From Macrostomum lignano (lineage: Eukaryota): DNA of 42,457 nt. The notes under the pieces were generated by a model that was not told where the DNA came from, did no database searches, and saw nothing but the letters and a program-made list of their open reading frames with translations. The position numbers and the translations under genes are program-made. The first letter of the stretch is position 1. Each line of letters begins with the position of its first letter. The stretch covers positions 1-42,457 of the forward strand of contig NIVC01004545.1 in assembly GCA_002269645.1 (NCBI GenBank), read 5' to 3'. This document shows, piece after piece, positions 3,355-26,472 of this stretch.

Positions 3355-3947
3355 TATATCATTCAATGAAAATTTCAAAATTTCAAAGTTATAGGGATAC
3401 TTTTCAGCTTCAATGCAGACTCCAATTGCCGACCATCTGCTTTGCCTCTACAACGCGGCTATTTTCGAAGAGAAGCCTATACTATTCCCTCAAGAATTCT
3501 CATTCATCCCCAAGCATTTTGCAGTTCTCTCGGCTGGCTCCTCAGTCTCAGCAAACTTACAATGATCCTTTCAACAATTTAAAACATTTCTCAGCATTTA
3601 GTACGACTCATTAATCAGTGTTCGATACATATCGGCGGACTTTTGCACAACTCAGGATTTAGCTGTGCCTATGCCTTCAGCAGTTTAGCAGCATTGTCTG
3701 CATTTTAGCAATTCCATACTTTAAATGGAGCTAGGCAACACCCATTGATGAGATCAGCCAGACTTGAAGCAGTTTTACATATCAATTTTTCTTAGTGGCT
3801 TGTGCCAATTAGCAAAAATAATTAATTGCTTTACTTAATAAAAAATTTCAATCGCTATTAATCAATATCAATATTAATCGAAAGATTTTCTAATTAGTCC
3901 ATGCATAATTTACAAATAAATATAAATTAATTCAAATTTAATTGTTC

Positions 3948-4019
3948 GCAGCGAGGTGGATTCGAACCTGGGACCTTACGCCTAGCCTAAACCTAGTGCC
4001 TACATGCGGCCACTCCGCC
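3948..4019 (-). pseudogene. tRNA-derived sequence (SINE head or tRNA pseudogene)
   Basis: Minus strand GGCGGAGTGGCCGCATGTAGG (A-box-like) ... GGTTCGAATCC (B box), 72 bp; acceptor stem pairs poorly. Confidence 0.65.
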
Positions 4020-4547
4020 TATTGATGGAAAGGCGAGAAAATCAGCCATATAAGCTTCGACACTGCAGTCAAATACATAGCAGTGATGGGCTGCTCAGTG
4101 CGCAGGCAGAGCCAATGCACAGTTGAGTGAAATCTATAAATAGCAATTGTCTATGCAGTCCGCCATTCAGCTAGGGTCAGAGGAATGTACACACAGCCAC
4201 TGAGCATTTTTTCTCTCCCTTGCACACTGTAGCCAGTATTGAAACTTGGAGAAAAAAGTTATGGCGCAATCTCAATTGGAGTTTCAATTCAGTCAGTCGA
4301 GATTTTGACCTTTTCTAGCCTCCCATTAAAAGCATAAGGAAAACTCGTTTTTCGAATATTTAATCCACTTAGCACGGAAGCAAATATTTGAAAAATTTTA
4401 GGTACAATCCTTGAAAAAATTTGCAGGTTTAGAAAAAAACGCGATCAAATTTGGTTGAGGCATTCAGTATTAAATGCGTCATTCACAAACAGACAGACAA
4501 ACAAACAAAGGTAGGACTTTTAGTATATAAGATTTAGTATATTTAGA

Positions 4548-5038
4548 CTAGCTAATTAGAGCTGGCTGCCAGCAGCCAGAATAATTTTTTTATTGCCCCC
4601 CTTTAAGTGGAGCGGAGTGAGTTTTCTTATCAGTTGGCTCTGGCGCAATCAATTAAGATTGACTGTGAAGTTTCTCGCTGATAAAATTTGCATTGAATTC
4701 GCCCATTTAAAACTGTTTTTCGAATATTTAATCCCTTTAGCATTGAAGCAGATACAAGAAATTTTAACCGTCTTCTTTCCAGACAATTTTGAATCTTTTG
4801 GCGAAAACGCGATCAAAATCGGTGAAGAATTGCAATCTCTAGAGCGTTATGGACAAGCATACAAATATTAGAGATTTAGTATATTTAGACAAGCAAACAT
4901 ACAAACCTTAGAGATTTAGTATATTTAGAAATCTCTAGAGCGTTATGGACAAGCAAGCAAGCATACAAATATTAGAGATTTAGTATATTTAGATTAGATG
5001 GACAAGCATACAAACCTTAGAGATTTAGTATATTTAGA
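4548..5038 (-). mobile_element. Short non-autonomous Helitron-like element with stacked 5' ends
   Basis: Minus-strand 3' end: hairpin CTGGCTG-CTGG-CAGCCAG, then CTAG|T (CTAG at 4548-4551). 5' end A|TCTAAATATACTAAATCTCT repeated four times between 4872 and 5038. Confidence 0.65.
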
Positions 5039-5190
5039 TAGATAGATTGGGGTGGCTGTTGTTAAACCTCACTTATAATAAATCGGATCGTTGTTTGTCA
5101 GTGAACTTAGCACTGTCGTCTCGCCTCGCATACTCTCAGCTCTTGACTTGCTCTTTTTAACAACTGTCTTATCTAAACATCTCCAAAAGC

Positions 5191-5229
5191 TGCCCTAAAG
5201 ATAATCGAAATGGTCGAAATGCATTGGCA
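5191..5229 (+). ncRNA. Decayed minimal type I hammerhead ribozyme (Penelope-type)
   Basis: TGCC CTAAAGA T AATC GAAAT GGTC GAA ATGCAT T GGCA. Helix I TGCC/GGCA and the GAA are retained; core is mutated from CTGAAGA. Homologous to the copies at 9418 and 24464. Confidence 0.6.
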
Positions 5230-5235
5230 TATACT

Positions 5236-5672
5236 CTGGTGGTCAACACAGAAAACCGTCGTGCTCTTCCTGCCGGACGACATCGAGGCTGCAAATTTGT
5301 GCCGAGGCGCTGATGGACAGGCGGCAGAGCTTCCGCGTTGTCAACAGTTCGTCTACCTCCGTGGTCTGATTTTCGGCGTCCGCGAAGGCTTGCGGCGTCG
5401 CCGCGGGCTTGCCTGGGCTGCCTTCCATTCTGTGAGGGCAGTCCTGCAGTCCGAGGACCTACCTGACCGCCAGAGGATGGCATTCTTCCAGGCGGTGGTC
5501 GAAACCGTCCTGTTGTAGAAAGCTGAGACCTGGACGCTGACGGATTCACTCGAGCAACAAGTTGACGCGGCGCCCACTGGCCTAATGCGCGCCGTCTTTA
5601 AGATCGGCTACGAGCAAGTGACCAACGCGCCTTTGTATCACCGCGCCGGCCTGGTCCGCCCAAGCAGTCTGA
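5236..5672 (+). mobile_element. RTE-like non-LTR retrotransposon fragment (RT C-terminus), degraded
   Basis: LVVN-QKTVVL...FVYLRG...RRGLAWAAF...RMAFFQAVVETVLL*KAETWTLTDSLEQQVDA...VTNAPLY matches the LINE pattern GLxVNxxKT...FKYLGS...SVLLYGxETWTL. One stop and one frameshift. Confidence 0.8.
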
Positions 5673-5922
5673 GTCTCTCTCCGGTCTCACTGTCGCTTTC
5701 CGGATTCGCAAAGCCCATAACTCTCGCCACGGCGCCCCAACGACCGTAGAGCCTGTCGACAGAGCTCTTCCATTTCTGGCTCAATAGGCGACATCGAATG
5801 AGACTTTTTAGCTCCAGCAGATTGAGAATGCGAGCTTCCAACTCTTCTGGAATAGACTGGTTAAACAGCTTCGTTTGCTGCTGTTGCACTGGCTCTGGAT
5901 CCTCGACGTCAGCCTCAGGCAT
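5638..5922 (-). pseudogene. F-box motif ORF truncated by the LINE fragment
   Basis: SIPEELEARILNLLELKSLIRCRLLSQKWKSSVD fits the F-box consensus LPxE(I/L)xxxIxxxLxxxxLxxxxxV(C/S)KxW. The last ~10 codons are antisense LINE sequence. Confidence 0.7.
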
Positions 5923-6722
5923 AGTTTTAGACGAGTTAACTTTTGTATATGCGACTAGCGCATTGCATATACACTTGAAATAAGCGGATTAAGAAATGAA
6001 GTACAATAAATTTGTAAAAAGCAGTTATAAATAATCAGAGATCATCCCCATACACTCTCCGCATACGAGAATAGTATATTCGTTTCGAAGGTGACGGATC
6101 GGCCCAACTGCCCTTGCCGACATACATGTACAAGGCGCTAGGGGGCTATAGAAGCTTTTTTATTCATGATGACTGGATATAGTTGTAGTGCTATTGGCCG
6201 CATTTGTAACGTTTTTTACATGTAACTAGTCCCGACAAAGCGTTTCGTTAAGTTTCAAAATTGGAAGGGAATATTGTTGTCGTGACGTGAATCCTGGCTA
6301 CGCGCCTGGTTCGAGCTCGTAATGTTTTTCTACAGCAAAAATTGAACTAACGATGCTTAGGTAAATTGCGGTAGTGACGATGTAGAGTAAAATAAGACAG
6401 ACGATTGAATCATATCGTATATTTCAAATTAATGGATTAATAAGAGTCGAAAAACAGTAAGTTCGACACAGGAACCAAAGCTAAATAAAACCAAAACTAA
6501 CTTAATAGATGGGGTTGAGTCCAGATGAAAGAAAGGTAGGAGTGCGCGGCTGAGGAAAGAGGCAAAATTGAAGAGCCAATCAGAAGGCAGCGAGGGAGAG
6601 AATTTTACAACTGAACTACTTACTGGACAGAGGGAGAGAAAACAGAGTAAGCACAGGCGAGTGCAGATCACCTGAAGAGATGTATTTTAGAAACATTGGA
6701 GAAATTTTAAAAACAATGTCAC

Positions 6723-7854
6723 TCAGTAAACTTTTTTCTTTATTGAATAGGATCTCATTTCTGTCACTCGCCAGCGTCAATTCTTCCTCATCGCGTCCCA
6801 AAGCTTGGCGAAGTTGACGGGGGCTGGCGGCTCCCCCATGGCAAACAGGCTCACCGAGACCTGCACAGTAAACGGAGAGCCGTAGCAGTCCATAAACTCC
6901 AGCTGATTTGGATCCACATCAATTCTATCAACTTTCCACTCGGACTCGTCTAGGATCTGCCAGCCGTCGCAGTCTGTCCAGTCAGGAAAGGTGAGGAAGA
7001 ACCAGAAAGCTCCCCGCTCCGACTCGTCAAGGATGTCCACAACTCGCCTCGCTGTGGCTCTGAGCAGGATCTCTTCAAATGGGGGGTTGAGCACCCAGCC
7101 GCCTGGATGCTGCATCAGGTCTATGTGAAAAAAAGTCGCCCAGACTGCCGAATGGGCTGTCAGTGTCAGGGAACAGGCTGCAGAACTTTGCTCCCTGCCG
7201 ACCCAGCAGCTGATAGTTGAGGGGCGAAGCGAAGCCCTCGTGAGCGGCTTCGCCCAGCTCGAACAGGGCATCGAAAGCTTTGGGGCAGAGGCTGGACTCG
7301 CCGCCTCTGAACATTCTCAGGCTGTGGTAGCGAAGGCACACCAGCGCGGCCCGCTGCTCACCGCGAAGCTCGACCAGCTGCTTGACTCGCTTGCTCCTAG
7401 GCGTCCAGAATTTCCCAAATATGATGCGGCCTCGACTGCCGGCCTCCTCGTATCGCAGCTGCACAGTTTGCTCCTCCTTTGCGATGTCACTCTCTCCCTG
7501 TAGAAACTGATCGATCATGGACAGCAGCGACTCTACCAAATGCGTCGCTTCGTCGCTCGACATGTCGGTGAAGCTCCCGCAGAACGATTTCACGAACTCA
7601 TCTTTGCTTCTGTTGTCGCTCAACTTCTGTGGCAGCAGACGGAATGTCTCGGACATTTGCTGACCATCGGTGGTCTGCATGGTGATGAGCCAACGACCGA
7701 ATTGAATTTCTGTCCTTTTCTGCTGATTTCTATGCTCAGCTGGCTGAAACCGTTGAGTGCGTTTCTTGAGCCAACTCACGAGTCGGTCTATTTCCCTAAA
7801 CTGGGAATACTCGAGCAGCAGTTTGACGTGAAGGTTTTGTTCTTCATCAGCCAT
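6723..7854 (-). pseudogene. PCIF1: PCIF1/CAPAM-like methyltransferase copy 1, +1 frameshift in an A-run at ~7128-7134 (pseudogene or read error)
   Basis: ORFs 7075-7854 and 6777-7271 join into a protein collinear with 20792-21922. A7 run here vs A6 in copy 2. In-frame TGA at 6777-6779. Confidence 0.85.
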
Positions 7855-8179
7855 AGTAAACTTCTATCATTGCCTTCTCACCTTAGGTCCTGGTTTTATG
7901 CTATCAGTTTTTTTCGTTTTTCGCTTTTCATTTTGTTTCTTTTTGGCTTTGAGATTTGGACTCGGTTTGTCAGCATCCGAACTGAAGTGTACGCTATGTT
8001 TTTCGAAACCCGCCCTCACGACTAAATGTACACATTTTGTAGCCTTTATACTGGTAACTGGGCTATTTTTAGCAGATTTCGAACTATTTTTCAACAAAAA
8101 CAATTCCTAAGAAATTCGTCATTGAAAGCAGGCGTAGAATAATACATACGAAGGAAAGAGGCAAAAACTGCGTACTGGT

Positions 8180-11755: not shown

Positions 11756-12413
11756 CCCCTCGTAAGCCTTGACATGTTAGCGATGCCCCCCATAAACCTT
11801 GAAATCTAAAAAATCCCCTGTTAACTTTGAAACCCGCTAAAATCTAACCCTCAACCCAAACCTGACCTAAACCTAACTTTCACCCAACCTAAAGCCTTGA
11901 AATCTCAGCAATTCTTCTTCCCTAAGCCTTGGCATTTAAGTGATTCCTTCTTTAAGAATCACAGCACTATAACGATTCCCTCCAAGCTTTGACATCGTAG
12001 CAATTCCCAAGTGAATCTTTTAAGTTTGACATGACTTTTATTTTATGTATACATAGTGCTACTTTTATTTTTACATGACTCTTCTTCTATCAGCGCCCCC
12101 CACCGTGGCGAGCCAACAAAGAATACAATAAAAATTAAGTAAAGTACATGTACTTTGAAGTAGCTTCTGACTTTTGCTTTGACATCTCAGAAACCCCCCT
12201 GTAATCTCAGTTATTGTCTGTGAGCCTTGACGTCTCAGTAATTCTCCCCAGCACAGCACTATAGCTTCATTTAATTTTTACATGACACCTTTCATGTCTG
12301 ACATGATGTTTCTTTTGATTTTTACATTACGCTTCTTTTATTCTTCCATGATGCTTCTTAATTTTTTAAATGACACTTCCATTAGTTTTTTATGAGGCTT
12401 CTATGATTTTTTC

Positions 12414-13545
12414 ATGATGCTTCTATGATTGTTTACATGACGCTTCTATGATTGTTTACATGACGCTTCTATGATTGTTTACATGACGCTTCTATGATTG
12501 TTTTCATGACGCTTCTATGATTGTTTACATGACGCTTCTATAATTGTTTACATGGCGCTTCTATGATTGTTTACATGACGCTTTTATGATTTTAACATGA
12601 CGCTTCTATGATTGTTTACATGACGCTTCTATGATTGCTTGCATGACGCTTCTATGATTTTTTACATGACGCTTCTATGCTTGTTTACATGACGCTTTTA
12701 TGATTTTTTACATGACGCTTCTATGCTTGTTTACATGACGCTTCTATGATTGTTTACATGACGCTTTTATGATTTTAACATGACGCTTCTATGATTGTTT
12801 ACATGACGCTTCTATGATTGTTTACATGACGCTTCTATGATTGTTTTCATGACGCTTCTATGATTGTTTACATGACGCTTCTATAATTGTTTACATGGCG
12901 CTTCTATGATTGTTTACATGACGCTTTTATGATTTTAACATGACGCTTCTATGATTGTTTACATGACGCTTCTATGATTGCTTGCATGACGCTTCTATGA
13001 TTTTTTACATGACGCTTCTATGCTTGTTTACATGACGCTTTTATGATTTTTTACATGACGCTTCTATGCTTGTTTACATGACGCTTCTATGATTGTTTAC
13101 ATGACGCTTCTATGATTTTTACACGACGCTTCTATGATTGTTTACATGACGCTTCTATGATTGCTTGCATGACGCTTCTATGATTTTTTACATTACGCTT
13201 CTATGCTTGGTTACATGACGCTTTTATGATTTTTTACATGACGCTTCTATGATTTTTACACGACGCTTCTATGATTGTTTACATGACGCTTTTATGATTT
13301 TAACATGACGCTTCTATGATTGTTTACATGACGCTTTTATGATTTTTTACATGACGCTTCTATGCTTGTTTACATGACGCTTCTATGATTGTTTACATGA
13401 CGCTTCTATGATTGTTTACATGACGCTTTTATGTTTTTAACATGACGCTTATATGATTGTTTACATGACGCTTCTATGATTGCTTGCATGACGCTTCTAT
13501 GATTTTTTTACATGACGATTCTATGATTTTTTACATGACGCTTAC
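12414..13545. repeat. 23-bp minisatellite, about 49 units
   Basis: Same unit as 336-1136. Confidence 0.97.
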
Positions 13546-14148
13546 ATAATTTTTTTCTTGTCTTGGCGTTAAAAAGCTTTAATTGAAAAAACTCTACTCT
13601 CTAAAAATTCGAACCATCATCCCTGCATTTAGCAGTTTAGTCTGTTTACCTTTAGGCTGAACATGAATTTTAGCATTTATATATAATTCAAAAGTTTCAA
13701 AACTCCAAGCATAGAGTAAATCACACGAGGCAGTTCTGACATAATCAATTTCTCAGTCAGTCAGTATCAGTTAACAATATGGTTACGCAATCTAAATCAA
13801 GTCTGGTGCTACGCTTCCACACTGCATTTTCAATACGGTGACGCAATTCAAGTCGGAGTTACAATTCAGTTATGATGCAATCTATTTCAGAATCAGAATT
13901 CAACCAGTCAGTTTTTTCTCTAGCATTCTTACAATGCATTTCAAGTCGAAAAGTTTGCTTGACCTTTACAAAAATGCATGTTTTTCGAATATTTAATCCC
14001 TTTAGCATCGAGCAATTTCTTAGCCAATATACATGTACCGTCCCGGGGAAATTTCTGATCGAACAGTGCAAATTCGAACAAAATCAGTCAAGCCATTCAG
14101 GAGAAAATCGATTTCGTACAAACAAACATCACATTTTTAGTATATGGA

Positions 14149-14176
14149 CTAGCCATTAGCCCCCAGCTGGGGGGCC
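14149..14176 (-). mobile_element. Helitron-like 3' terminus abutting a 5' terminus (head-to-tail junction)
   Basis: Plus strand ttttagtatatgga|CTAG ccatta gccccc-agct-gggggc: hairpin plus CTAG next to a TATACTAAAA 5'-end motif on the minus strand. Confidence 0.55.
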
Positions 14177-14389
14177 TTATAAATGACACCAAGTGGTTTT
14201 TATTTTGGTCCAATGGTAACCATAATTACCATTTCCATTAATCAAAAATTACTTTTTCTTATTTTTGCAAAAACAAAAACTTATCGGCCAAAAGTTTCCA
14301 TCAGCCCAAAACCCTTTTTTAATTAGCACAAGGTGCTTATCTTTTGAAGCACAAACTCAGCACCACTAACCTTAACAACACTTTTCCAA

Positions 14390-15660
14390 GATTAGCACCG
14401 CTGCTCAGATTAGCAACGCTCCTCAGATTAGCACTATTTACCTCCCCCCCCCAGATTAGCAACGCTCCTCAGATTAGCACTATTCCCCCCAGATTAGCAC
14501 CGCTCCTCAGATTAGCACTACTTCCCCCCAGCTTAGCACCGCTCCTCAGATTAGCAATGCTTCTCAGATTAGCACTACTTCCTCCCAGATTAGCACCGCT
14601 TCTCAGATTAGCAACGCTCCTCAGATTAGCACTACTTCCCGCCAGATTAGCACTGCTCCTCAAATTAGCACTACTTCCCCCCCAGATTAGCACCGCTCCT
14701 CAGATTAGCACTACTTCCGTCTAGATTAGCACCCCTACCCCTAAATTAGCACTCCAGATTAGCAACGCTCCTCAGATTAGCACTGCTCCTCAGATTAGCA
14801 CTACTCCTCAGATTAGCACTACTTCCCCCCAGATTAGCAACGCTCCTCAGATTAGCAACGCTCCTCAGATTAGCACTACTTCCCCCTAGATTAGCACCCC
14901 TACCCCTAAGTTAGCACTCCAGATTAGCAACGCTCCTCAGATTAGCACTACTCCTCAGATTAGCACTACTTCCGTCTAGATTAGCACCCCTACCCCTAAA
15001 TTAGCACTCCAGATTAGCAACGCTCCTCAGATTAGCAACGCTCCTCAGATTAGCACTGCTCCTCAGATTAGCACTACTCCTCAGATTAGCACTACTTCCC
15101 CCCAGATTAGCACTACTCCTCAGATTAGCACTACTTCCCCCCCAGATTAGCAACGCTCCTCAGATTAGCAACGCTCCTCAGATTAGCACTACTTCCCCCT
15201 AGATTAGCACCCCTACCCCTAAGTTAGCACTCCAGATTAGCAACGCTCCTCAGATTAGCACTACTTCCCCCCCAGATTAGCAACGCTCCTCAGATTAGCA
15301 ACGCTCCTCAGATTAGCACTACTTCCCCCTAGATTAGCACCCCTACCCCTAAGTTAGCACTCCAGATTAGCAACGCTCCTCAGATTAGCACTACTTCCCC
15401 CCAGATTAGCACTGCTCCTCAGATTAGCAATGCTCCTCAGATTAGCACTACTTCCCCCTAGATTAGCACCCCTACCCCTAAATTAGCACTCCAGATTAGC
15501 AACGCTCCTCAGATTAGCACTACTTCCCCCAAGATTAGCACTACTTCCCCCCCAGATTTGCACTTCTCCCCCCAGATTAGCATCGCTCCTCAGATTAGCA
15601 CTACTCCCGCCCAGATTAGCACCCCTACCCCTAAATTAGCACTCCACTCAGATTAGCAAC
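14390..15660. repeat. CAGATTAGCA-core minisatellite with higher-order repeats
   Basis: About 1270 bp vs ~280 bp in unit A. Marker ATTAGCACCCCTACCCCTAA recurs at ~14725, 14890, 14980, 15200, 15330, 15460, 15615. Confidence 0.95.
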
Positions 15661-16149
15661 ACTTTACAAGACTTTGTCAGTAATGGTCTCTGAAAATTAG
15701 CGCATACAATAGACTTGCACTGCTGTAGAAGATTAATGCAGTCCCAGAATAATATAATTAAATGAACATTTCGAAAAATCTGCGTCAATCTGCATTGGAG
15801 GTGACATCAATGTTGTCACAAGTTTTGGGGATAAATTTTCTACTTCAATGCAGACTCGAATTGCCCAACATCTGCTTTGCCTCTACAACGCGGCTATTTT
15901 CGAAGAGAAGCCTTTACTGCTCCCTGGAGAATTCTCATTCATCCCCCTAGCATTCTGCAGTTCTCCAAGCAAATATTTGAATTTTTTAAGGTAAAATCCA
16001 AGGTCACTAAAATTTTAAGTTGAAGAATTTTGCAAGTTTAAAAAAAACGCGATCAAATTTGATTGAGGCATTCAGTATTAAATGCGTCATTCACAAACAG
16101 ACAAACAAAGGTAGGACTTTTAGTATATTAGAAAATTATATATTAGCAC

Positions 16150-16650
16150 TATTTCCCCAGATTAGCACCACTCCCCGGATTAGCACCATTCCCCCAAAAG
16201 TAGCACCACTTCATTAGATTAGCACTACTTCCCCCAGATTAGCACTACTTCCTCCAGATTAGAACTTCTTCCCCCAGATTAGCACCACTCCCCCAGATTA
16301 GCACCACTCCCCCAGATTAGCACTATTAGCACCTCTCCCCCAGATTAGCACTATTAGCACCACTACCCAAAAATTACCACCACTTCCCCAGATCAGCACC
16401 ACCCCCAGATTAGCACCACTCCCCAAAAATTAGCAGAACTTCCCAAAAACTAGCACAGTTTTATACAAAATTAGCATCGCTCCCCCAGATTAGCACCGCT
16501 CCTCAGATTAGCATTACTGAGCCCCCAGACTCCCCCCCCCAGATTAGCACCACTACCCCTAATAATTAGCACTCCGCCGCTCAGATTAGCAACACTTTGC
16601 CAAGATTAGCACTACTCCTCCAGATTAGCACCACTCTTCCAGATTAGTAA
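16150..16650. repeat. CAGATTAGCA-core minisatellite, block 2 of unit B
   Basis: Near-identical to 2020-2515. Confidence 0.9.
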
Positions 16651-16727
16651 TGCTCTCTGCAAATTAGCACATACTCACAATAGATTGGCACTGATCTAAA
16701 AGATTAATGCAGTCCCAGAATAATATA

Positions 16728-17487
16728 GCTTTTTGCAGCTTATTTGGGCTTACGCGCATTTAATTTAATCCAATATACATTTGCCAATGTAACAGAGCTT
16801 ATTGTCTATGGTAGAAAGGCTGCCACAGCGGCACTTAATTTAGTCCAACAAGCATCAATTTGGTCCAAATGCTTGTGAGCCAATGGCAAACTCTTGCCTT
16901 CTCGCAACCGCCTAAGGTTTGTTGCGCACCGCTGGAATGTCAGCGTCTGTACCAGCAATTTTCAGTCGCTTTTCCAGAGCTCTGCTGATAGTCCAAATCT
17001 GATAACCAACTGGAACTTTTCCTTCAACTTCTGCTGCATTTTCTGCTCCGTCAACAAAGGGTTCGTCTCAATTGCATTAAGTAGCAGTTGGACCTGAGTC
17101 TCTAGCAACTTGCCTTGGCGATTGCCACCTTTCACAGGCGACCTATGCCAGAAGTGGTTTCAACACGCTGATGGATGCTGTAAACCATCTTTCTTCTACA
17201 ATATATTCAGCAACCTTGCAATGTCCTTTGGGTATTCACCTCTGTTGATTGCTTTGACCACAAGCCAGTGGCATTCGTTCGACGACCTAGCATGGTTCAC
17301 AATTATGGAGCTGATCTTGCTCCTCCGCAACAGTTGCAAATGAAGCTATGGACCAAATTGATGCTTGTTGGACTAAATTAAGTGCCGCTGTGGCAGCCTT
17401 TCTACCATAGACAATAAGCTCATTTACTTTGGCAAATCAATTTGGATTAAATTAAATGCACGTAAGCCCGAATGGGCTGCAAAAAGC
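16728..17487 (-). mobile_element. Tc1/IS630-type TIR element, duplicate of 2596-3354
   Basis: Same TIRs, TA flanks and interior. Confidence 0.85.
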
Positions 17488-18080
17488 TATATCATTCAAT
17501 GAAAATTTCAAAATTTCAAAGTTATAGGGATACTTTTCAGCTTCAATGCAGACTCCAATTGCCGACCATCTGCTTTGCCTCTACAACGCGGCTATTTTCG
17601 AAGAGAAGCCTATACTATTCCCTCAAGAATTCTCATTCATCCCCAAGCATTTTGCAGTTCTCTCGGCTGGCTCCTCAGTCTCAGCAAACTTACAATGATC
17701 CTTTCAACAATTTAAAACATTTCTCAGCATTTAGTACGACTCATTAATCAGTGTTCGATACATATCGGCGGACTTTTGCACAACTCAGGATTTAGCTGTG
17801 CCTATGCCTTCAGCAGTTTAGCAGCATTGTCTGCATTTTAGCAATTCCATACTTTAAATGGAGCTAGGCAACACCCATTGATGAGATCAGCCAGACTTGA
17901 AGCAGTTTTACATATCAATTTTTCTTAGTGGCTTGTGCCAATTAGCAAAAATAATTAATTGCTTTACTTAATAAAAAATTTCAATCGCTATTAATCAATA
18001 TCAATATTAATCGAAAGATTTTCTAATTAGTCCATGCATAATTTACAAATAAATATAAATTAATTCAAATTTAATTGTTC

Positions 18081-18152
18081 GCAGCGAGGTGGATTCGAAC
18101 CTGGGACCTTACGCCTAGCCTAAACCTAGTGCCTACATGCGGCCACTCCGCC
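18081..18152 (-). pseudogene. tRNA-derived sequence, duplicate of 3948-4019
   Basis: Identical sequence including the B box GGTTCGAATCC. Confidence 0.65.
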
Positions 18153-18680
18153 TATTGATGGAAAGGCGAGAAAATCAGCCATATAAGCTTCGACACTGCA
18201 GTCAAATACATAGCAGTGATGGGCTGCTCAGTGCGCAGGCAGAGCCAATGCACAGTTGAGTGAAATCTATAAATAGCAATTGTCTATGCAGTCCGCCATT
18301 CAGCTAGGGTCAGAGGAATGTACACACAGCCACTGAGCATTTTTTCTCTCCCTTGCACACTGTAGCCAGTATTGAAACTTGGAGAAAAAAGTTATGGCGC
18401 AATCTCAATTGGAGTTTCAATTCAGTCAGTCGAGATTTTGACCTTTTCTAGCCTCCCATTAAAAGCATAAGGAAAACTCGTTTTTCGAATATTTAATCCA
18501 CTTAGCACGGAAGCAAATATTTGAAAAATTTTAGGTACAATCCTTGAAAAAATTTGCAGGTTTAGAAAAAAACGCGATCAAATTTGGTTGAGGCATTCAG
18601 TATTAAATGCGTCATTCACAAACAGACAGACAAACAAACAAAGGTAGGACTTTTAGTATATAAGATTTAGTATATTTAGA

Positions 18681-19107
18681 CTAGCTAATTAGAGCTGGCT
18701 GCCAGCAGCCAGAATAATTTTTTTATTGCCCCCCTTTAAGTGGAGCGGAGTGAGTTTTCTTATCAGTTGGCTCTGGCGCAATCAATTAAGATTGACTGTG
18801 AAGTTTCTCGCTGATAAAATTTGCATTGAATTCGCCCATTTAAAACTGTTTTTCGAATATTTAATCCCTTTAGCATTGAAGCAGATACAAGAAATTTTAA
18901 CCGTCTTCTTTCCAGACAATTTTGAATCTTTTGGCGAAAACGCGATCAAAATCGGTGAAGAATTGCAATCTCTAGAGCGTTATGGACAAGCATACAAATA
19001 TTAGAGATTTAGTATATTTAGACAAGCAAACATACAAACCTTAGAGATTTAGTATATTTAGATTAGATGGACAAGCATACAAACCTTAGAGATTTAGTAT
19101 ATTTAGA
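18681..19107 (-). mobile_element. Short Helitron-like element, duplicate of 4548-5038 with one fewer 5'-end repeat
   Basis: Same hairpin and CTAG at 18681. 64 bp shorter (duplication offset falls from 14133 to 14069). Confidence 0.65.
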
Positions 19108-19259
19108 TAGATAGATTGGGGTGGCTGTTGTTAAACCTCACTTATAATAAATCGGATCGTTGTTTGTCAGTGAACTTAGCACTGTCGTCTCGCCTCGCAT
19201 ACTCTCAGCTCTTGACTTGCTCTTTTTAACAACTGTCTTATCTAAACATCTCCAAAAGC

Positions 19260-19298
19260 TGCCCTAAAGATAATCGAAATGGTCGAAATGCATTGGCA
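19260..19298 (+). ncRNA. Decayed hammerhead ribozyme, duplicate of 5191-5229
   Basis: Identical sequence. Confidence 0.6.
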
Positions 19299-19304
19299 TA
19301 TACT

Positions 19305-19741
19305 CTGGTGGTCAACACAGAAAACCGTCGTGCTCTTCCTGCCGGACGACATCGAGGCTGCAAATTTGTGCCGAGGCGCTGATGGACAGGCGGCAGAGCT
19401 TCCGCGTTGTCAACAGTTCGTCTACCTCCGTGGTCTGATTTTCGGCGTCCGCGAAGGCTTGCGGCGTCGCCGCGGGCTTGCCTGGGCTGCCTTCCATTCT
19501 GTGAGGGCAGTCCTGCAGTCCGAGGACCTACCTGACCGCCAGAGGATGGCATTCTTCCAGGCGGTGGTCGAAACCGTCCTGTTGTAGAAAGCTGAGACCT
19601 GGACGCTGACGGATTCACTCGAGCAACAAGTTGACGCGGCGCCCACTGGCCTAATGCGCGCCGTCTTTAAGATCGGCTACGAGCAAGTGACCAACGCGCC
19701 TTTGTATCACCGCGCCGGCCTGGTCCGCCCAAGCAGTCTGA
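19305..19741 (+). mobile_element. RTE-like LINE fragment, duplicate
   Basis: Identical to 5236-5672. Confidence 0.8.
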
Positions 19742-19991
19742 GTCTCTCTCCGGTCTCACTGTCGCTTTCCGGATTCGCAAAGCCCATAACTCTCGCCACG
19801 GCGCCCCAACGACCGTAGAGCCTGTCGACAGAGCTCTTCCATTTCTGGCTCAATAGGCGACATCGAATGAGACTTTTTAGCTCCAGCAGATTGAGAATGC
19901 GAGCTTCCAACTCTTCTGGAATAGACTGGTTAAACAGCTTCGTTTGCTGCTGTTGCACTGGCTCTGGATCCTCGACGTCAGCCTCAGGCAT
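19707..19991 (-). pseudogene. F-box motif ORF, duplicate
   Basis: Identical translation to 5638-5922. Confidence 0.7.
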
Positions 19992-20791
19992 AGTTTTAGA
20001 CGAGTTAACTTTTGTATATGCGACTAGCGCATTGCATATACACTTGAAATAAGCGGATTAAGAAATGAAGTACAATAAATTTGTAAAAAGCAGTTATAAA
20101 TAATCAGAGATCATCCCCATACACTCTCCGCATACGAGAATAGTATATTCGTTTCGAAGGTGACGGATCGGCCCAACTGCCCTTGCCGACATACATGTAC
20201 AAGGCGCTAGGGGGCTATAGAAGCTTTTTTATTCATGATGACTGGATATAGTTGTAGTGCTATTGGCCGCATTTGTAACGTTTTTTACATGTAACTAGTC
20301 CCGACAAAGCGTTTCGTTAAGTTTCAAAATTGGAAGGGAATATTGTTGTCGTGACGTGAATCCTGGCTACGCGCCTGGTTCGAGCTCGTAATGTTTTTCT
20401 ACAGCAAAAATTGAACTAACGATGCTTAGGTAAATTGCGGTAGTGACGATGTAGAGTAAAATAAGACAGACGATTGAATCATATCGTATATTTCAAATTA
20501 ATGGATTAATAAGAGTCGAAAAACAGTAAGTTCGACACAGGAACCAAAGCTAAATAAAACCAAAACTAACTTAATAGATGGGGTTGAGTCCAGATGAAAG
20601 AAAGGTAGGAGTGCGCGGCTGAGGAAAGAGGCAAAATTGAAGAGCCAATCAGAAGGCAGCGAGGGAGAGAATTTTACAACTGAACTACTTACTGGACAGA
20701 GGGAGAGAAAACAGAGTAAGCAGAGGCGAGTGAAGATCACCTGAAGAGATGTATTTTAGAAACATTGGAGAAATTTAAAAAACAATGTCAC

Positions 20792-21922
20792 TCAGTAAAC
20801 TTTTTTCTTTATTGAATAGGATCTCATTTCTGTCACTCGCCAGCGTCCATTCTTCCTCATCGCGTTCCAAAGCTTGGCGAGGTTGACGGAGTCTGGCGGC
20901 TCCCCCATGGCGAACAGGCTCACCTTGACCTGCGCAGTAAACGGGGAGCCGTAGCAGTCCTGAAACCCGAGCTGATTTGGCTCCACATCAATTCTGTCAA
21001 CTTTCCACTCGGACTCGTCCAGGATCTGCCAGCCGTCGCAGTCTGTCCAGTCAGGAAAGGTGAGGAAGAACCAGAAAGCTCCCCGCTCCGACTCGTCAAG
21101 GATGTCCACAACTCGCCTCGCTGTGGCTTTGAGCAGGATCTCTTCAAATGGGGGGTTGAGCACCCAGCCGCCTGGATGCTGCATCAGGTCTATGTGAAAA
21201 AAGTCGCCCAGACTGCCGAATGGGCTGTCAGTGTCAGGGAACAGGCTGCAGAACTTTGCTCCCTGCCGACCCAGCAGCTGACAATTGAGGGGCGAAGCGA
21301 AACCCACGTGAGCGGCTTCGCCCAGCTCGAACAGGGCATCGAAAGCTTTGGGGCAGAGGCTGGACTCGCCGCCTCTGAACATTCTCAGGCTGTGGTAGCG
21401 AAGGCACACCAGCGCGGCCTGCTGCTCACCGCACAGCTCGACCAGCTGCTTGACTCGCTTGCTCCTAGGCGTCCAGAATTTCCCAAATGTGATTTGGCCT
21501 CGGCTGCCGGCCTCCTCAAATCGTAGCTTCGGGGTTTTCTCCGCCTTTGCGATGTCACTCTCTCCTTGTAGAAACTGATCGATCATGGACAGCAGCGACT
21601 CTACCAGATGCGTCGCTTCGTCTTTCGACATGTCGCTGAAGCTCAAGCAGAGCGATTTCACGAACTCAACTTTGCTTCTGTTGTCGCTCAACTTCTGTGG
21701 CAGCAGAGGGAATGTCTCGGACATTTGCTGACCATCGGTGGTCTGCATGGTGATGAGCCAACGACCGAACTGATTTTCTGTCCTTTTCTGCTGATATCTA
21801 TGCTTAGCTGGCTGAAACCGTTGAGTGCGGTTCTCGAGCCAACTCACGAGTCGGTCTATTTCCCTAAACTGGGAATACTCGAGCAGCAGTTTGAGGTGAA
21901 GGTTTTGTTCTTCATCAGCCAT
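20792..21922 (-). CDS. PCIF1: PCIF1/CAPAM-like cap-adjacent adenine N6-methyltransferase homolog, 376 aa, intronless, no WW domain
   Basis: Motifs in order FGRWL...PLLP, LRYHSL...P(K)AFDAL, GFASPLNC, FCSLFPDTDSPFGSLGDFF, NPPFEE, F(L)TFPDW parallel recalled human PCIF1 FNRWM...PLLP, ECFASPLNC, YCSAFPDTDGYFGSRG, NPPFCEE, FIVFIPEW. Symbol is a family-level call; orthology is not shown. Confidence 0.9.
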   Translation of the reverse strand: MADEEQNLHLKLLLEYSQFREIDRLVSWLENRTQRFQPAKHRYQQKRTENQFGRWLITMQTTDGQQMSETFPLLPQKLSDNRSKVEFVKSLCLSFSDMSKDEATHLVESLLSMIDQFLQGESDIAKAEKTPKLRFEEAGSRGQITFGKFWTPRSKRVKQLVELCGEQQAALVCLRYHSLRMFRGGESSLCPKAFDALFELGEAAHVGFASPLNCQLLGRQGAKFCSLFPDTDSPFGSLGDFFHIDLMQHPGGWVLNPPFEEILLKATARRVVDILDESERGAFWFFLTFPDWTDCDGWQILDESEWKVDRIDVEPNQLGFQDCYGSPFTAQVKVSLFAMGEPPDSVNLAKLWNAMRKNGRWRVTEMRSYSIKKKVY

Positions 21923-22299
21923 AGTAAACTTCTACCATTGCCTTCTCACCTTAGGTTCTGGTTTCATGCTATCAGTTTTTTCGTTTTTCGCTTTTCATTT
22001 TGTTTCTTTTTTGGCTTTGAGATTTGGCCTTGGTTTTATCAGTGTCTCAACTGAAGTGTACGCTATGAGTACACTTTGGATAAAGGGAGAACTTACTATC
22101 CCCCAACTCTGCTCTTTACAGCAATCCATTGTTCTCAAAAAGTGGAACTACGTTTGCCTATACGTGGATCCAACAGTACTCAAAATCTCTTACCTAATCT
22201 AGTTGCTATTGACAACCATTTCATTCTCTCTATAGTGTCTATTGTATAATATACTGAGAAAAATTGCTAGAGCTCTACCTACTAAAGAGCCGCAGATCC

Positions 22300-23438
22300 A
22301 ACATTAGCAAAGCTGTATCCTCTCTGAGCATGGCTGGGGAAAACATTAGAACAGAATTGACCGACGATTTGGAAGGTCTGTTGACAAAAGATAAAACTCA
22401 AGTAAAAAAATTTCCTTGAAGAACTTTTGAGAGAGATTCCTGATGAAAGAAAAGAATATTGGTGCCAGAGAGTCAATTCAAGTTGGGACTTGGAAGGATC
22501 ATTAATTTTACTGGAAGACCTCTTCACTGGAGACGATAATGAAGAAGAAGAATTGAAGAAGAAGAAAGAAGAGATGGAACAGAGAACGCAAAGGAAGATC
22601 AAAGAACTGAAGCAGAATTTGAAGAACTAGGTAGTGAAAGGAAAACTGAATGTGATCTGCAACCCAGCGCTTGAGAGCTTTCACTACGATCGAAGGAAAG
22701 CTCTAAGTGAGTCAAGGATAAATGTCACTATTAATAACAATTCGAGGAACATAATCTTCTATGCAATTCAAGCTGGCCAGATTTTTCTACAAGTCAAACA
22801 GAAGTTGAATCGAAGTGTCATGATGGCAACTTATATGGAGCACAAGGATATTTAGTTGTCAGTCAATGAGAGTTTAGGGGCATGGTCGTGCTTGCGGCCA
22901 AGCCAAATCGAGCGCTTGTATTTTGGAACTGAAAGAAGGCATACACACTGAAAGATGGTATTGATATACTAGCTTACAACTCAAAGGATGAACAAAGTTT
23001 GAACATACCAGGGTAGACACAGTTTAAGCACATACGTATTGGCTGCATTAACGAATCATAAGGCATAACACTAAGGGTGCCTTCATGAAATTTCTGGAAG
23101 GAAAGGACAATGGACAACAAAAGATTGGCATCAAGAAGGCAAGTGCCTACTTCTTCATGAAGCTAGCAAAAGTTTCCGAGAACTACCCAACAATTCAACA
23201 AATTGCTATGCCGCTCCGAGAACTCCAAGCGATTTTGCCGGTGTACCGGTATTTTCGAGAGTATGGCCCGGAAACCCGGCCGAGACGGCTAGTAGCGGCA
23301 GTCACTCAGCTCCGGAAGCGTCGAGAAGGGTCGGCCCGACTAGGTGATGACGTGCGACTCAACCGGATTCGCCGCCTTGCCGCGGTGTGCGGATGGTCGG
23401 GACGGCAGCTGCCGGAACTATTTTGTCTGCCGTTTTAG
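22300..23438 (+). pseudogene. Degraded coding-like segment of unknown family
   Basis: Consecutive same-strand ORF pieces (22427-22630, 22634-22855, 23085-23438) separated by stops or frameshifts. No motif recognised. Confidence 0.3.
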
Positions 23439-23690
23439 TTGCGAATCTTTTCTATGCGCGCGTATACCTATTAAAATTTTCTTAATTGTATGCATGCGCA
23501 TGTGTTGCATGTTTTCCTAACGAGTCGTGTACGGTGTTTGTTTTATTTTAATAAAACTTTCAAGATCCAAAAATTATTTTCTTACTAATAGGTTCAAATT
23601 TTTTTTGTTTTTTTATTAGTCCAAGGGAGTTTTGGTAGGGCTCCTAGAATTCATCGGTTATTACGCTAATTATTATTAATTTCTCAAGTC

Positions 23691-23897
23691 TCAAGACATT
23701 TGCTGACCATCGGTGGTCTGCATGGTGATGAGCCAACGACCGAACTGATTTTCTGTCCTTTTCTGCTGATTTCTATGCTTTGCTGGCTGAAACCGTTGAG
23801 TGCGTTTCTCGAGCCAACTCACGAGTCGGTCTATTTCCCTAAACTGGGAATACTCGAGCAGCAGTTTGACGTGAAGGCTTTGTTCTTCATCAGCCAT
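23691..23897 (-). pseudogene. PCIF1: PCIF1-like copy 3, 5' stub (68 codons)
   Basis: MADEEQSLHVKLLLEYSQ...TDGQQMS then TGA at the breakpoint. Upstream flank is homologous to units A and B. Confidence 0.9.
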
Positions 23898-24463
23898 AGT
23901 AAACTTCTACCATTGCCTTCTCACCTTAAGTTCTGTTTTCATGCTTTCAGTTCTTCGCTTTTACCTTTTTATTCTGTTTATTTTTCGTCTTTAGGATTTG
24001 GCCTTGGTTGGTCAGCATCCGAACTAAAGTGTACGCTGTTTTATGAAACCCGCCTCGCAATATTTAATGTACACATTCTATAGCCTTTATAAGAGCGTAA
24101 TATAGGGCTATTTTAGCAACGTTTGAATTATGCTTCAACAAAAACAATTTCTAAGAAATTTTACGTCTAAAGCGGTCATCCAATTTTTTGCACGTGAAGG
24201 AACGGGGCTTAAATTGTGTACCGCTAATCAAGACTAAGTTTGAGATCATAGCAAAACTTTAATAAAACATGTAATACCAGATTGCTAGGGCTAGGCTAGC
24301 AAATAATGAGCAACATGTACCGGTAGGCTAAGAAGCGGATTTAAAAACGACAGCCGATTCAAAGAATTCCTATTAATTTTTTTCGTTCTAACTGGCTTAT
24401 TAAACAGTAGCTAGAAGAATTAATTAAAAAACAAGCATTGAATATTTAATCAAAGAATCTATA

Positions 24464-25898: not shown

Positions 25899-25922
25899 CT
25901 GAAAAATAATAAAATTAGAAAA

Positions 25923-26472
<550 letters not shown>

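What the first reader, a model, noticed from the sequence alone, without database searches (positions are those of the whole stretch)
20792..21922. Stand-alone, WW-less, intronless PCIF1/CAPAM-like m6A methyltransferase expanded as a tandem array
Seen: a 376-aa ORF keeps the SAM-binding and catalytic motifs (FASPLN, FPDTD-FGS-G, NPPF, PDW) and a shortened helical region. It has no WW domain and no intron, while neighbouring genes have introns. Three copies lie within 17 kb. Known: canonical animal PCIF1 makes cap-adjacent m6Am, is recruited by its WW domain to Ser5-phosphorylated Pol II CTD, and is usually single-copy. Inferred: this may be a lineage-specific family uncoupled from Pol II, acting on other capped RNAs (spliced-leader RNA, snRNA, transposon or viral RNA), arising by retrocopy or horizontal transfer and now under birth-and-death turnover. 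This is the best candidate for an undescribed system here.
Basis: partly seen in the sequence, partly recalled or inferred. Interest (0 to 1): 0.82.

Follow-up and report, generated by a model that had tools for sequence, protein, structure and literature searches.

The report
Giant-virus-type PCIF1-like gene in flatworm
A flatworm (Macrostomum) gene encodes a short cap-adenosine-methyltransferase-like protein that groups with giant-virus versions rather than with the normal animal enzyme, but the copies at this locus look damaged or only weakly constrained.

Summary
The 376-aa single-exon ORF at 20792-21922 (minus strand) is real. It is a PCIF1/CAPAM-fold methyltransferase: Pfam PF12237 E 1.4e-26, AlphaFold pLDDT 91.7, best PDB fold match CAPAM. 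No WW domain is encoded anywhere in the window. The source is Macrostomum lignano or a close relative.

The "three copies" are unequal. One is intact. One has a T6-to-T7 frameshift and an early stop. One is only a fragment covering codons 1-68. The first two lie in a 14-kb tandem segmental duplication.

The gene is not a trimmed animal PCIF1. Canonical PCIF1 forms a 100%-bootstrap clade that excludes every Macrostomum paralogue. These paralogues share indels, length and profile scores with WW-less proteins of giant viruses and metagenomes.

M. lignano has at least four such paralogue groups, three of them in tandem arrays. One has introns, and all sit among ordinary animal genes.

The subfamily at this locus evolves almost neutrally (omega 0.7-1.15). 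The intact ORF uniquely carries Val in place of a Glu that is invariant in the other 229 aligned sequences.

Family-level function is probably CTD-independent N6-methylation of cap-adjacent adenosine. This copy may be weakened. Expression and activity are untested.

The parts
20792..21922 (-). Copy B: the intact single-exon ORF (376 aa plus stop). It has an N-terminal helical domain (aa 1-165) and a PCIF1/CAPAM-type methyltransferase core (aa 166-356). The tail, aa 357-376, is unconstrained.
   Evidence: The tail has low pLDDT, and the three copies end differently after aa 356.
21755..21769 (-). FGRWL motif (aa 52-56) in the N-terminal helices. Arg54 is nearly invariant in the family and aligns weakly with FNRW(L/M)L of CAPAM.
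21305..21307 (-). Codon 206, GTG (Val), where every other family member has Glu (GAG in copy A and in the reference-assembly copy).
21284..21304 (-). GFASPLN motif (aa 207-213), a motif-I-like SAM loop.
21197..21253 (-). FCSLFPDTD...FGSLGDFF motifs (aa 224-242). Just upstream, the LLGRQGAK segment is present in the short/viral-type forms and absent from canonical PCIF1.
21146..21157 (-). Catalytic NPPF motif (aa 256-259).
21923..22067 (-). Conserved 5' flank shared by copies A and B, the fragment and the reference contig. It contains an in-frame TAG at 21932-21934.
6726..7854 (-). Copy A, 95% nucleotide identity to B. It has a +1 T (T6 to T7) at about 7128-7134 after codon 240, and a TGA at 6777-6779 (codon 359).
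23688..24160 (-). Third 'copy': 5' flank plus codons 1-68 only (CDS part 23694-23897). Homology stops at 23688.
22068..23687 (.). About 1.6 kb of unrelated sequence between the fragment and copy B. It is absent from the reference M. lignano contig, where the upstream region joins the gene directly.
12076..22067 (.). Unit 2 of the tandem segmental duplication. It holds minisatellite arrays, an F-box gene and copy B. It is paired with unit 1 at 1-7998.
1..7998 (.). Unit 1 of the tandem segmental duplication. It carries copy A and a second F-box exon at 5641-5988.
19710..20057 (-). F-box domain exon of the gene immediately downstream of copy B on the same strand. It is co-duplicated with the PCIF1-like gene.

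Best explanation
The ORF is a resident single-exon gene of Macrostomum (lignano or a close relative). It belongs to a flatworm-expanded family of short, WW-less PCIF1/CAPAM-fold methyltransferases. The nearest relatives of this family are the stand-alone PCIF1-like proteins of giant viruses (Nucleocytoviricota) and uncultured environmental sequences, not the canonical WW-containing eukaryotic PCIF1.

Shown: the fold, the motifs, the lack of a WW domain, the clade placement, the tandem duplication, and the decay of the neighbouring copies.

Inferred mechanism at family level: the helical domain and the Rossmann domain form a CAPAM-like groove. That groove binds a capped 5' end and transfers a methyl group from SAM to N6 of the cap-adjacent adenosine through the NPPF loop. 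Recruitment by the Pol II CTD is not involved. The enzyme would therefore act on already-made capped RNAs, as the viral homologues presumably do in cytoplasmic factories.

Inferred history: acquisition by horizontal transfer, or descent from an old WW-less paralogue, early in the Macrostomum lineage. This was followed by amelioration, intron gain in one paralogue, and repeated tandem duplication with birth-and-death turnover.

This locus sits at the decaying or fast-evolving end of the family. One copy is frameshifted, one is truncated, and the intact copy has E206V at the invariant motif-I-like glutamate. It may therefore be a weakened enzyme or a non-catalytic cap/RNA binder.
For: Family and fold:
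- Pfam PF12237 E 1.4e-26.
- PDB sequence match to CAPAM, E 1e-18 with the 5-sequence profile and 1e-31 to 1e-29 with the 95-sequence profile.
- AF2 model with pLDDT 91.7 and pTM 0.90.
- The Foldseek PDB top six hits are all CAPAM (E 2e-14 to 3e-12, TMq 0.50-0.61). The next hit has E 9e-3.

Viral-type affinity:
- BFVD top hits are PCIF1-like proteins of Bodo saltans virus, Pithovirus LCPAC101/103/LCDPAC01, CroV (362 aa, TM 0.66/0.68), TetV-1, Hokovirus and Salmon gill poxvirus.
- 25 loci lie on IMG/VR giant-virus contigs of 6-957 kb (most over 40 kb), some matching aa 5-375.
- Metagenomic relatives sit in dense ORFan contigs with HNH, TGS1-like Methyltransf_15 and glycosyltransferases.
- None of the 25 Pfam families displayed (of 29) for the best 95 library hits is WW, and none of ten long hits scanned singly has one. 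Fusions are to FtsJ 2'-O-methyltransferase (6), glycosyltransferase family 8 (GT8, 5), poxvirus-type poly(A) polymerase and RNA polymerase subunits.
- The canonical clade has bootstrap 100 and excludes all Macrostomum domains. The Macrostomum clade plus 3 unknown sequences has bootstrap 72.
- Shared indels.
- Profile scores for this ORF are 141 bits on the viral profile versus 89 bits on the canonical profile.

Residency in the animal genome:
- The gene is linked to CUB, F5/8C and F-box exons.
- Paralogues lie next to ferrochelatase, Aminotran_5, Ank and LRR genes, and Mlig021227 has 4 introns.
- Coding GC is 0.55, host-like.

Turnover and decay.
Against: - No expression data and no biochemical data are available.
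- Cap specificity rests on fold similarity and on viral FtsJ and poly(A)-polymerase fusions, not on identified cap-contact residues.
- Deep nodes of the tree are unsupported (bootstrap 0-1), so neither the donor nor the direction of transfer is resolved.
- Two sequences inside the Macrostomum clade (P0007, P0008) look like eukaryotic transcripts of unknown organisms. An old eukaryotic WW-less paralogue therefore remains possible.
- Omega of 0.68-1.15 among the three recent copies is not distinguishable from neutrality.
- E206V argues against full activity of this copy.
Confidence: 0.55

Rival explanations
1. The copies at this locus are non-functional relics. On this reading the Mlig030305 subfamily is a recently duplicated, neutrally drifting set of pseudogenes-in-the-making, and any family function is carried by other paralogues such as Mlig000263.
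For: - Omega is 0.68-1.15 among copy B, copy A and the reference copy, not different from neutral (binomial p 0.3-0.8).
- Copy A is frameshifted and has a nonsense codon. The third copy is truncated.
- Copy B has Val at a Glu that is invariant in 229 of 229 other sequences. Copy A has N50I and C214Y, and the reference copy has E202K, all at conserved columns.
- Mlig000263 units show omega 0.11-0.32, which is clear purifying selection.
Against: - Replacements among the three copies still avoid family-conserved columns (Fisher p 0.02, Mann-Whitney p 0.004).
- Two of the three ORF-breaking lesions fall in the last 20 codons, beyond the folded domain. The third is a homopolymer length change that could be a long-read sequencing error.
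- The 356-codon body is open in all three copies.
Confidence: 0.3
2. The tandem array is partly an assembly artefact. Paralogous or homeologous copies of a repeat-rich, recently duplicated genome may have been mis-joined or collapsed, so that the true locus holds one gene.
For: - 4.4 kb of flank (16250-20685) is 100% identical to the other unit, while the adjacent 1.4-kb gene cassette differs by about 5%.
- The units are bounded by long minisatellite arrays.
- The frameshift sits in a homopolymer.
- The reference contig shows a single copy with a different upstream junction.
Against: - Tandem pairs or triplets of other paralogues occur in independent reference contigs, so tandem duplication is a family habit.
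- A mosaic of identical and diverged segments is also what gene conversion produces.
Confidence: 0.15
3. It is the methyltransferase domain of, or a gene derived from, a DIRS1-type tyrosine-recombinase retrotransposon. The DIRS1 methyltransferase (MT) domain belongs to the PCIF1 clade.
For: Iyer et al. place DIRS1 MT domains in the PCIF1 clade (PMC4738411). The gene is multi-copy and intronless.
Against: - No RT, RNase H or tyrosine-recombinase domain was found in 112 ORF segments of the window, nor by tblastn with the long multidomain hits.
- No RT family appears among the displayed domain partners of the best 95 relatives.
- DIRS1 MT domains are reported to be catalytically degenerate, whereas NPPF and the other motifs are intact here.
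Confidence: 0.03
4. It is the 3' part of a canonical PCIF1 whose WW exon lies upstream, or a retrocopy of such a gene.
For: An AG lies directly before the ATG-proximal sequence and could serve as a splice acceptor. The gene is intronless, and an AATAAA sits at the end of the ORF.
Against: - No WW-like coding segment exists in any frame of the window, including 20.5 kb upstream.
- The protein starts where the full-length viral and paralogous proteins start.
- The phylogeny, the indels and the profile scores all exclude the canonical clade.
- No poly(A) remnant is present, and homology between the copies runs on past the 3' end.
Confidence: 0.03

Closest known systems
Vertebrate PCIF1/CAPAM (human 6IRV/6IRW, zebrafish 6IRX-6IS0), the cap-specific m6Am writer
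   Same: It shares the Rossmann methyltransferase core with the FASPLN, FPDTD, FGSxG and NPPF motifs. It also has an N-terminal helical domain packed on the core, including a conserved RW(L/M)L helix. CAPAM is the only strong fold match in the PDB.
   Different: - It has no WW domain and no long linker.
- The helical domain is about 130 residues shorter.
- Identity is 15-17% in the structural alignments.
- There are three diagnostic indels in the core.
- It falls outside the 100%-supported canonical clade.
- It is single-exon and multi-copy.
- The intact ORF has Val at the invariant Glu.
Stand-alone 'PCIF1_WW domain' proteins of Nucleocytoviricota, including CroV E3T4I2, Hokovirus A0A1V0SFI2, Bodo saltans virus, Pithovirus LCPAC/LCDPAC MAGs, Tetraselmis virus 1, Salmon gill poxvirus and giant-virus metagenome-assembled genomes in IMG/VR
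   Same: They have the same length class (315-440 aa) and the same two-domain architecture without WW. They share the core indels, and the sequence matches are colinear over the full length. TM-scores reach 0.70 (query-normalised) and 0.74 (target-normalised). A profile built from viral loci scores this ORF far better than the canonical profile does.
   Different: This gene is encoded in an animal chromosome among animal genes, with host-like GC content. One paralogue carries spliceosomal introns, and the family is expanded in tandem arrays. Identity to the viral proteins is only 25-40%. The viral proteins have no published functional characterisation that I could find.
Drosophila Pcif1 and other catalytically dead PCIF1 proteins
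   Same: They set a precedent for PCIF1-fold proteins that have lost catalysis yet keep a function. The paralogue Mlig015920 has GPPF instead of NPPF, and this ORF has E206V.
   Different: Fly Pcif1 is a canonical-clade, WW-containing, single-copy gene that acts through the Pol II CTD (PMC10158991, abstract seen). Here the NPPF motif is intact and there is no WW domain.
DIRS1 retrotransposon methyltransferase domain
   Same: It belongs to the same PCIF1 clade of group-2 N6-adenine methyltransferases according to PMC4738411, and it is multi-copy.
   Different: It is not embedded in a polyprotein, and no RT or tyrosine recombinase lies nearby. The catalytic motifs are retained.

Membership tests
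Canonical PCIF1/CAPAM orthologues | N-terminal WW domain that binds the Ser5-phosphorylated Pol II CTD | tested here: not met
   Pfam finds only PF12237. No WW-like segment exists in any frame of the window, best E 0.17. An in-frame stop lies 4 codons upstream of the ATG.
Canonical PCIF1/CAPAM orthologues | Groups with animal and other eukaryotic PCIF1 in a phylogeny | tested here: not met
   In the NJ tree of 233 domains, the canonical clade of 39 sequences has bootstrap 100 and excludes all Macrostomum domains. The result comes from a distance method on 179 columns.
PCIF1 clade of group-2 (M.TaqI/M.EcoKI-like) N6-adenine methyltransferases (Pfam PF12237) | Methyltransferase core with a catalytic NPPF/Y loop and the FASPLN and FPDTD...FGSxG motifs | tested here: met
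   PF12237 scores 93.6 bits against a cut-off of 31.1. Motif positions are and column statistics.
PCIF1 clade of group-2 (M.TaqI/M.EcoKI-like) N6-adenine methyltransferases (Pfam PF12237) | Invariant glutamate at the end of strand 1 (E-x-F-A-S-P-L-N) | tested here: not met
   This ORF has Val206. Glu is present in all 229 other sequences that have a residue there, including copy A and the reference copy.
PCIF1 clade of group-2 (M.TaqI/M.EcoKI-like) N6-adenine methyltransferases (Pfam PF12237) | CAPAM-type helical domain packed against the methyltransferase core | tested here: met
   The AF2 model has pLDDT 91.7. Whole-chain Foldseek matches go to CAPAM only, with TMq 0.50-0.61. The domain is shorter than in CAPAM.
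PCIF1 clade of group-2 (M.TaqI/M.EcoKI-like) N6-adenine methyltransferases (Pfam PF12237) | m7G-cap-dependent N6-methylation of the first transcribed adenosine | not testable with these tools
   This needs enzyme assays. The cap-contact residues of CAPAM were not available in the texts I could read.
Short WW-less PCIF1-like proteins of giant viruses and metagenomes | Full-length colinearity in the 300-450 aa class with no extra targeting domain | tested here: met
   IMG/VR loci match aa 5-375 and 12-357. CroV, Hokovirus and the poxvirus proteins give TM 0.6-0.74.
Short WW-less PCIF1-like proteins of giant viruses and metagenomes | Shared core indels: 5 extra residues after SPLNxxx, 2 extra residues before GxW/F, and no 'GVGLYE'-type insert | tested here: met
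   Alignment.
Short WW-less PCIF1-like proteins of giant viruses and metagenomes | Scores better on a viral-only profile than on a canonical profile | tested here: met
   141.3 bits versus 89.5 bits for this ORF. All 11 Macrostomum domains behave the same way.
Short WW-less PCIF1-like proteins of giant viruses and metagenomes | Encoded in a viral genome | tested here: not met
   The window and the paralogue loci carry ordinary animal genes, introns and host-like GC content.
DIRS1 retrotransposon MT domain | Embedded in, or adjacent to, RT/RNase H and tyrosine-recombinase ORFs | tested here: not met
Processed retrocopy | Poly(A) remnant and target-site duplications at the ends of the intronless copy | tested here: not met
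   No A-tract follows the AATAAA. Homology between the copies continues for kilobases downstream. Target-site duplications were not searched for exhaustively.

The most novel reading that the evidence does not exclude
An animal lineage (Macrostomum) captured a giant-virus-type, CTD-independent cap-adenosine methyltransferase and turned it into a fast-turning-over, tandemly arrayed multigene family. Some members are enzymes and some are catalytically dead binders. The family could mark or read the 5' ends of a special RNA class, such as spliced-leader trans-spliced mRNAs or SL RNA, or it could take part in a conflict with viruses or transposons.
Probability: 0.2. Interest if true: 0.75.

Novelty: new variant of a known kind. 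Interest (0 to 1): 0.45.

Why it matters
[quoted passage not shown] Two things seen here appear to be uncharacterised in the papers I could search.

First, there is a large clade of short, WW-less PCIF1-fold proteins: 2,949 cluster representatives at E<=1e-3. It is centred on giant viruses and often fused to cap 2'-O-methyltransferase or poly(A) polymerase. Second, an animal carries an expanded family of that clade.

If these proteins are active, they would show that cap m6Am can be written away from Pol II. They would also give a compact, 360-aa cap-adenosine methyltransferase for study. Finally, they would document a gene exchange between giant viruses and an animal.

For this particular locus the practical message is caution. 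The one intact copy carries a unique substitution at an invariant residue, and its neighbours are broken.

Tried and rejected
- The word-indexed homologue search with the single protein found only 4 Macrostomum proteins. With the 95-sequence profile it returned only 10, because of the candidate cap.
- The first IMG/VR scan used patterns from the Macrostomum-only alignment and found nothing. The broader alignment worked.
I replaced it with a local six-frame WW HMM and regex search.
- tblastn of all 157 retrieved proteins, including long multidomain ones, against the window found nothing outside the three PCIF1-like copies. I therefore dropped the DIRS, polyprotein and viral-island readings.
- Rfam found no RNA family in the window.
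- The literature gave no paper linking PCIF1 with Macrostomum or Nucleocytoviricota beyond a passing Kaumoebavirus annotation, and none of the ten top-ranked flatworm papers mentions PCIF1. Boulias et al. 2019 (PMC6703822) was not held.
- Cap-contact residues of CAPAM could not be extracted from the open reviews, so conservation of the cap pocket was not scored.
- I could not test whether M. lignano also has a canonical WW-PCIF1. No eukaryotic genome collection was available, and the listing of the best 120 of 584 canonical hits showed none.
Full report
**Observation**

The minus-strand ORF at 20792..21922 encodes 376 aa. Pfam matches only PF12237, with E 1.4e-26 at 93.6 bits against a cut-off of 31.1, over aa 168-321. 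PF12237 is named 'PCIF1_WW' but models the methyltransferase core.

A five-sequence profile matches human and zebrafish PCIF1/CAPAM in the PDB at E about 1e-18. The match covers the FASPLN, FPDTD, FGSxG and NPPF blocks. With a 95-sequence profile the E-values are 1e-31 to 1e-29.

An AlphaFold model built on a 95-sequence alignment is confident, with mean pLDDT 91.7 and pTM 0.90. Only the last seven residues fall below pLDDT 50. Its six best PDB matches are all CAPAM chains, with E 2e-14 to 3e-12 and TM normalised to the query of 0.50-0.61. The next hit is at E 9e-3.

The feature is therefore real and far beyond chance. It is a PCIF1/CAPAM-fold protein with a helical N-terminal domain and a Rossmann core.

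**Completeness, WW domain and introns**

- The stop-to-stop frame begins only three codons before the ATG, with TAG at 21932-21934.
- The closest database protein is M. lignano Mlig030305g1, 92% identical and 361 aa. It is encoded by a contiguous 1086-bp gene.
- Viral homologues align colinearly over aa 5-375.
- A WW HMM built from ten textbook WW sequences, plus a W..W..P regex, found nothing credible in any of the six frames of the 42-kb window. The best E was 0.17.
- The N-terminal helical region is shorter than in CAPAM. About 50 residues lie between the conserved N-terminal helices and the core, against about 180 in zebrafish CAPAM. A weak alignment links the family motif 'ERWL' (FGRWL here, aa 52-56) to CAPAM 'FNRW(L/M)L'.

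The description 'WW-less, single exon, shortened helical region' stands.

**The copies**

tblastn and self-BLAST show a tandem segmental duplication with a period of about 14.1 kb. Window 1-7998 corresponds to 12076/15361-22067.

- Copy A (6726-7854) is 95% identical to copy B at the nucleotide level. It has an extra T in a T6 run after codon 240 and GGA>TGA at codon 359.
- The third 'copy' (23688-24160) is only the 5' flank plus codons 1-68.
- Compared with the reference contig NIVC01004180.1, the window has about 1.6 kb of unrelated sequence (22068-23687) between that fragment and copy B.
- The three near-identical genes (B, A and the reference copy) end differently after residue 356: at 376 aa, at a stop in codon 359, and at 361 aa after a 4-bp deletion. 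The folded protein therefore ends near residue 356 and the tail is free to vary.
- The 4.4 kb downstream flank (16250-20685) is 100% identical between the units, while the 1.4-kb gene cassette differs by about 5%. This points to gene conversion or to an assembly problem. I could not decide between them.

**Organism and residency**

All named hits are from Macrostomum lignano. Flanking DNA is 95.6-98.6% identical to an M. lignano contig.

The window also carries a CUB exon (28308-28784, plus strand) and an F5/8-type-C exon (25498-25914, minus strand). An F-box exon (19710-20057, minus strand) is co-duplicated with the gene, and there is a THAP hit. There is no RT, integrase or recombinase. Coding GC is 0.55, similar to the neighbouring exons.

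Other paralogues sit beside ferrochelatase, an aminotransferase, ankyrin genes and LRR genes. Mlig021227 is split by four introns. The gene is a settled resident of the animal genome, not contamination and not a recent viral insertion.

**The family within Macrostomum**

There are at least four paralogue groups.

| Group | Structure | Catalytic motif | Omega between copies |
|---|---|---|---|
| Mlig030305 (this locus) | Intronless; two copies plus a fragment here | NPPF | 0.68-1.15 |
| Mlig015920 | Intronless; two tandem copies 6.7 kb apart | GPPF in place of NPPF | 0.47 |
| Mlig021227 | Four introns | NPPF | not measured |
| Mlig000263 | 1283-aa model that fuses three tandem intronless units | NPPF | 0.11-0.32 |

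**Relationship to known PCIF1**

An exhaustive profile search found 2,949 cluster representatives at E<=1e-3. The best 150 are mostly 300-450 aa. None of the 25 Pfam families displayed (of 29) for the best 95 hits is WW, and none of ten long hits scanned singly has a WW domain. Their fusion partners are FtsJ (6), glycosyltransferase family 8 (GT8, 5), poxvirus-type poly(A) polymerase, RNA polymerase subunits, XRN, RNase III and a kinase.

Where genomic context could be read, relatives lie in dense, intron-free, ORFan-rich contigs of 46-290 kb. These carry an HNH endonuclease, a TGS1-like Methyltransf_15 and glycosyltransferases. A further 25 loci are on IMG/VR giant-virus contigs and MAGs.

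The best BFVD structural matches are PCIF1-like proteins of these viruses:
- Bodo saltans virus
- three Pithovirus-like MAGs
- CroV
- Tetraselmis virus 1
- Hokovirus
- Salmon gill poxvirus

I built a neighbour-joining tree from 233 core domains, 179 columns and 100 bootstraps.
- Canonical PCIF1 from animals, Phytophthora, a cryptophyte and a chlorophyte forms a clade with bootstrap 100. It excludes every Macrostomum domain.
- The 11 Macrostomum domains cluster with three unnamed sequences (bootstrap 72), among viral and metagenomic sequences.
- Deeper nodes are unsupported.

Other evidence agrees. Three indels are shared by Macrostomum and the short forms and are absent from canonical PCIF1. 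Every Macrostomum domain scores 50-80 bits higher on a profile built only from the IMG/VR loci than on the canonical profile. For this ORF the scores are 141 and 89 bits.

The gene is thus not a WW-deleted animal PCIF1. It belongs to the short, WW-less clade otherwise known from giant viruses.

The direction of transfer is not resolved. Two sequences inside the Macrostomum clade (P0007, P0008) look like eukaryotic transcripts from unknown organisms. One has a GC-rich CDS with AT-rich flanks (P0008), and the other has a terminal AATAAA (P0007).

**State of this subfamily**

Pairwise omega among copy B, copy A and the reference copy is 0.68-1.15, indistinguishable from neutrality (binomial p 0.3-0.8). 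Even so, replacements avoid family-conserved columns (Fisher p 0.02, Mann-Whitney p 0.004). Two of the three ORF-breaking lesions lie beyond the folded domain.

Most telling is the Glu that precedes GFASPLN. It is Glu in all 229 other aligned sequences that have a residue there: canonical, viral, metagenomic, the other Macrostomum paralogues, copy A and the reference copy. In the window's only intact ORF it is Val, GTG instead of GAG at 21305-21307. From my recollection of M.TaqI motif I (LEPACAHG), this Glu should contact the methionine part of SAM. That is an inference, not a test.

**Mechanism**

Shown: CAPAM fold, intact NPPF loop, no CTD-binding module.

Inferred for the family: SAM-dependent N6-methylation of the cap-adjacent adenosine of capped RNA without Pol II tethering. 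This rests on the fold and on viral fusions to cap 2'-O-methyltransferase and poly(A) polymerase.

For this copy, activity may be reduced or lost. A non-catalytic role has a precedent in the catalytically dead fly Pcif1 (PMC10158991).

The substrate proposals (SL RNA, snRNA) have no support in the window. Rfam found nothing and a recalled SL sequence did not match.

**Comparison and novelty**

Iyer et al. (PMC4738411) describe the PCIF1 clade as usually WW-fused and as including the DIRS1 methyltransferase (MT) domains. DIRS1 is excluded here.

Database annotations already label the viral and Macrostomum proteins as 'PCIF1 WW domain-containing'. I found no paper that analyses the short viral clade or its presence in a flatworm. 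One Kaumoebavirus paper even states that no viral homologue exists.

I rate the finding a new variant of a known kind. It is of moderate interest as a family, and lower for this particular, apparently degenerating locus.

Noticed in passing
window 16250-20685 versus 2120-6616: 4.4 kb of the duplicated unit is 100% identical between the two copies, while the adjoining 1.4-kb PCIF1-like cassette (20700-22067) is about 5% diverged. This suggests recent gene conversion or an assembly or polishing artefact.
   Followed up: partly
window 19241-20057 (-) and 5172-5988 (-): An F-box gene lies about 0.7 kb downstream of the PCIF1-like gene on the same strand. Its F-box domain is in the 19710-20057 exon. 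It is duplicated together with the PCIF1-like gene and is also present in the reference contig.
   Followed up: partly
L034 3280-4395 and 10001-11116 (M. lignano NIVC01003467.1): Paralogue Mlig015920 is a tandem pair, 89.5% identical at the protein level with omega 0.47. Its catalytic motif is GPPF instead of NPPF, so it is probably a catalytically dead PCIF1-like protein.
   Followed up: partly
L032 8453-15017 (M. lignano NIVC01002568.1): The 1283-aa gene model Mlig000263 is really three tandem intronless PCIF1-like units joined by predicted introns. These units are under clear purifying selection (omega 0.11-0.32) and have very high GC3 (0.86).
   Followed up: partly
proteins P0016-P0021, P0044, P0136 and loci L002-L029, L035, L036: Short-form PCIF1-like domains in giant-virus-like contigs are repeatedly fused to FtsJ 2'-O-methyltransferase, glycosyltransferase family 8, poxvirus-type poly(A) polymerase or a protein kinase. 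One sits 2 kb from a TGS1-like cap hypermethylase. Several of these contigs are GC-rich (0.59-0.67).
   Followed up: partly
window 10881-11755 and 25923-26488: There are two very long perfect tetranucleotide microsatellites: (ATAG) x219 and (TAAG) x141. They create spurious long ORFs of 304 and 322 aa.
   Followed up: no
window 222-1135, 12301-13543, 1257-1532, 14452-15658, 16142-16647, 33250-33857: Several minisatellite arrays are present: a 23-bp unit ACATGACGCTTCTATGATTGTTT, 18-20-bp CAGATTAGCAC... units, and a 21-bp unit. Some of them bound the duplicated units.
   Followed up: no
window 16718-16874 / 17343-17497, and 2586-2742 / 3211-3364: A pair of 157-bp inverted repeats (about 92% identical) lies about 470 bp apart inside each duplicated unit. 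This may be a foldback or MITE-like element.
   Followed up: no
window 25498-26791 (-) and 28308-28784 (+): There are exons of secreted-type animal genes. One ORF starts with a signal-peptide-like, Cys-rich N-terminus followed by an F5/8-type-C (discoidin) exon. A separate CUB-domain exon is also present. One ORF segment gave a THAP-domain hit (E 2.6e-4), but I did not locate it.
   Followed up: partly
L030 (SRR21676451 contig) and L031 (JGI 3300078644 contig): Two transcript-like sequences from unknown organisms (P0008 and P0007) fall inside the Macrostomum PCIF1-like clade. This suggests the short form also exists in other eukaryotes.
   Followed up: partly
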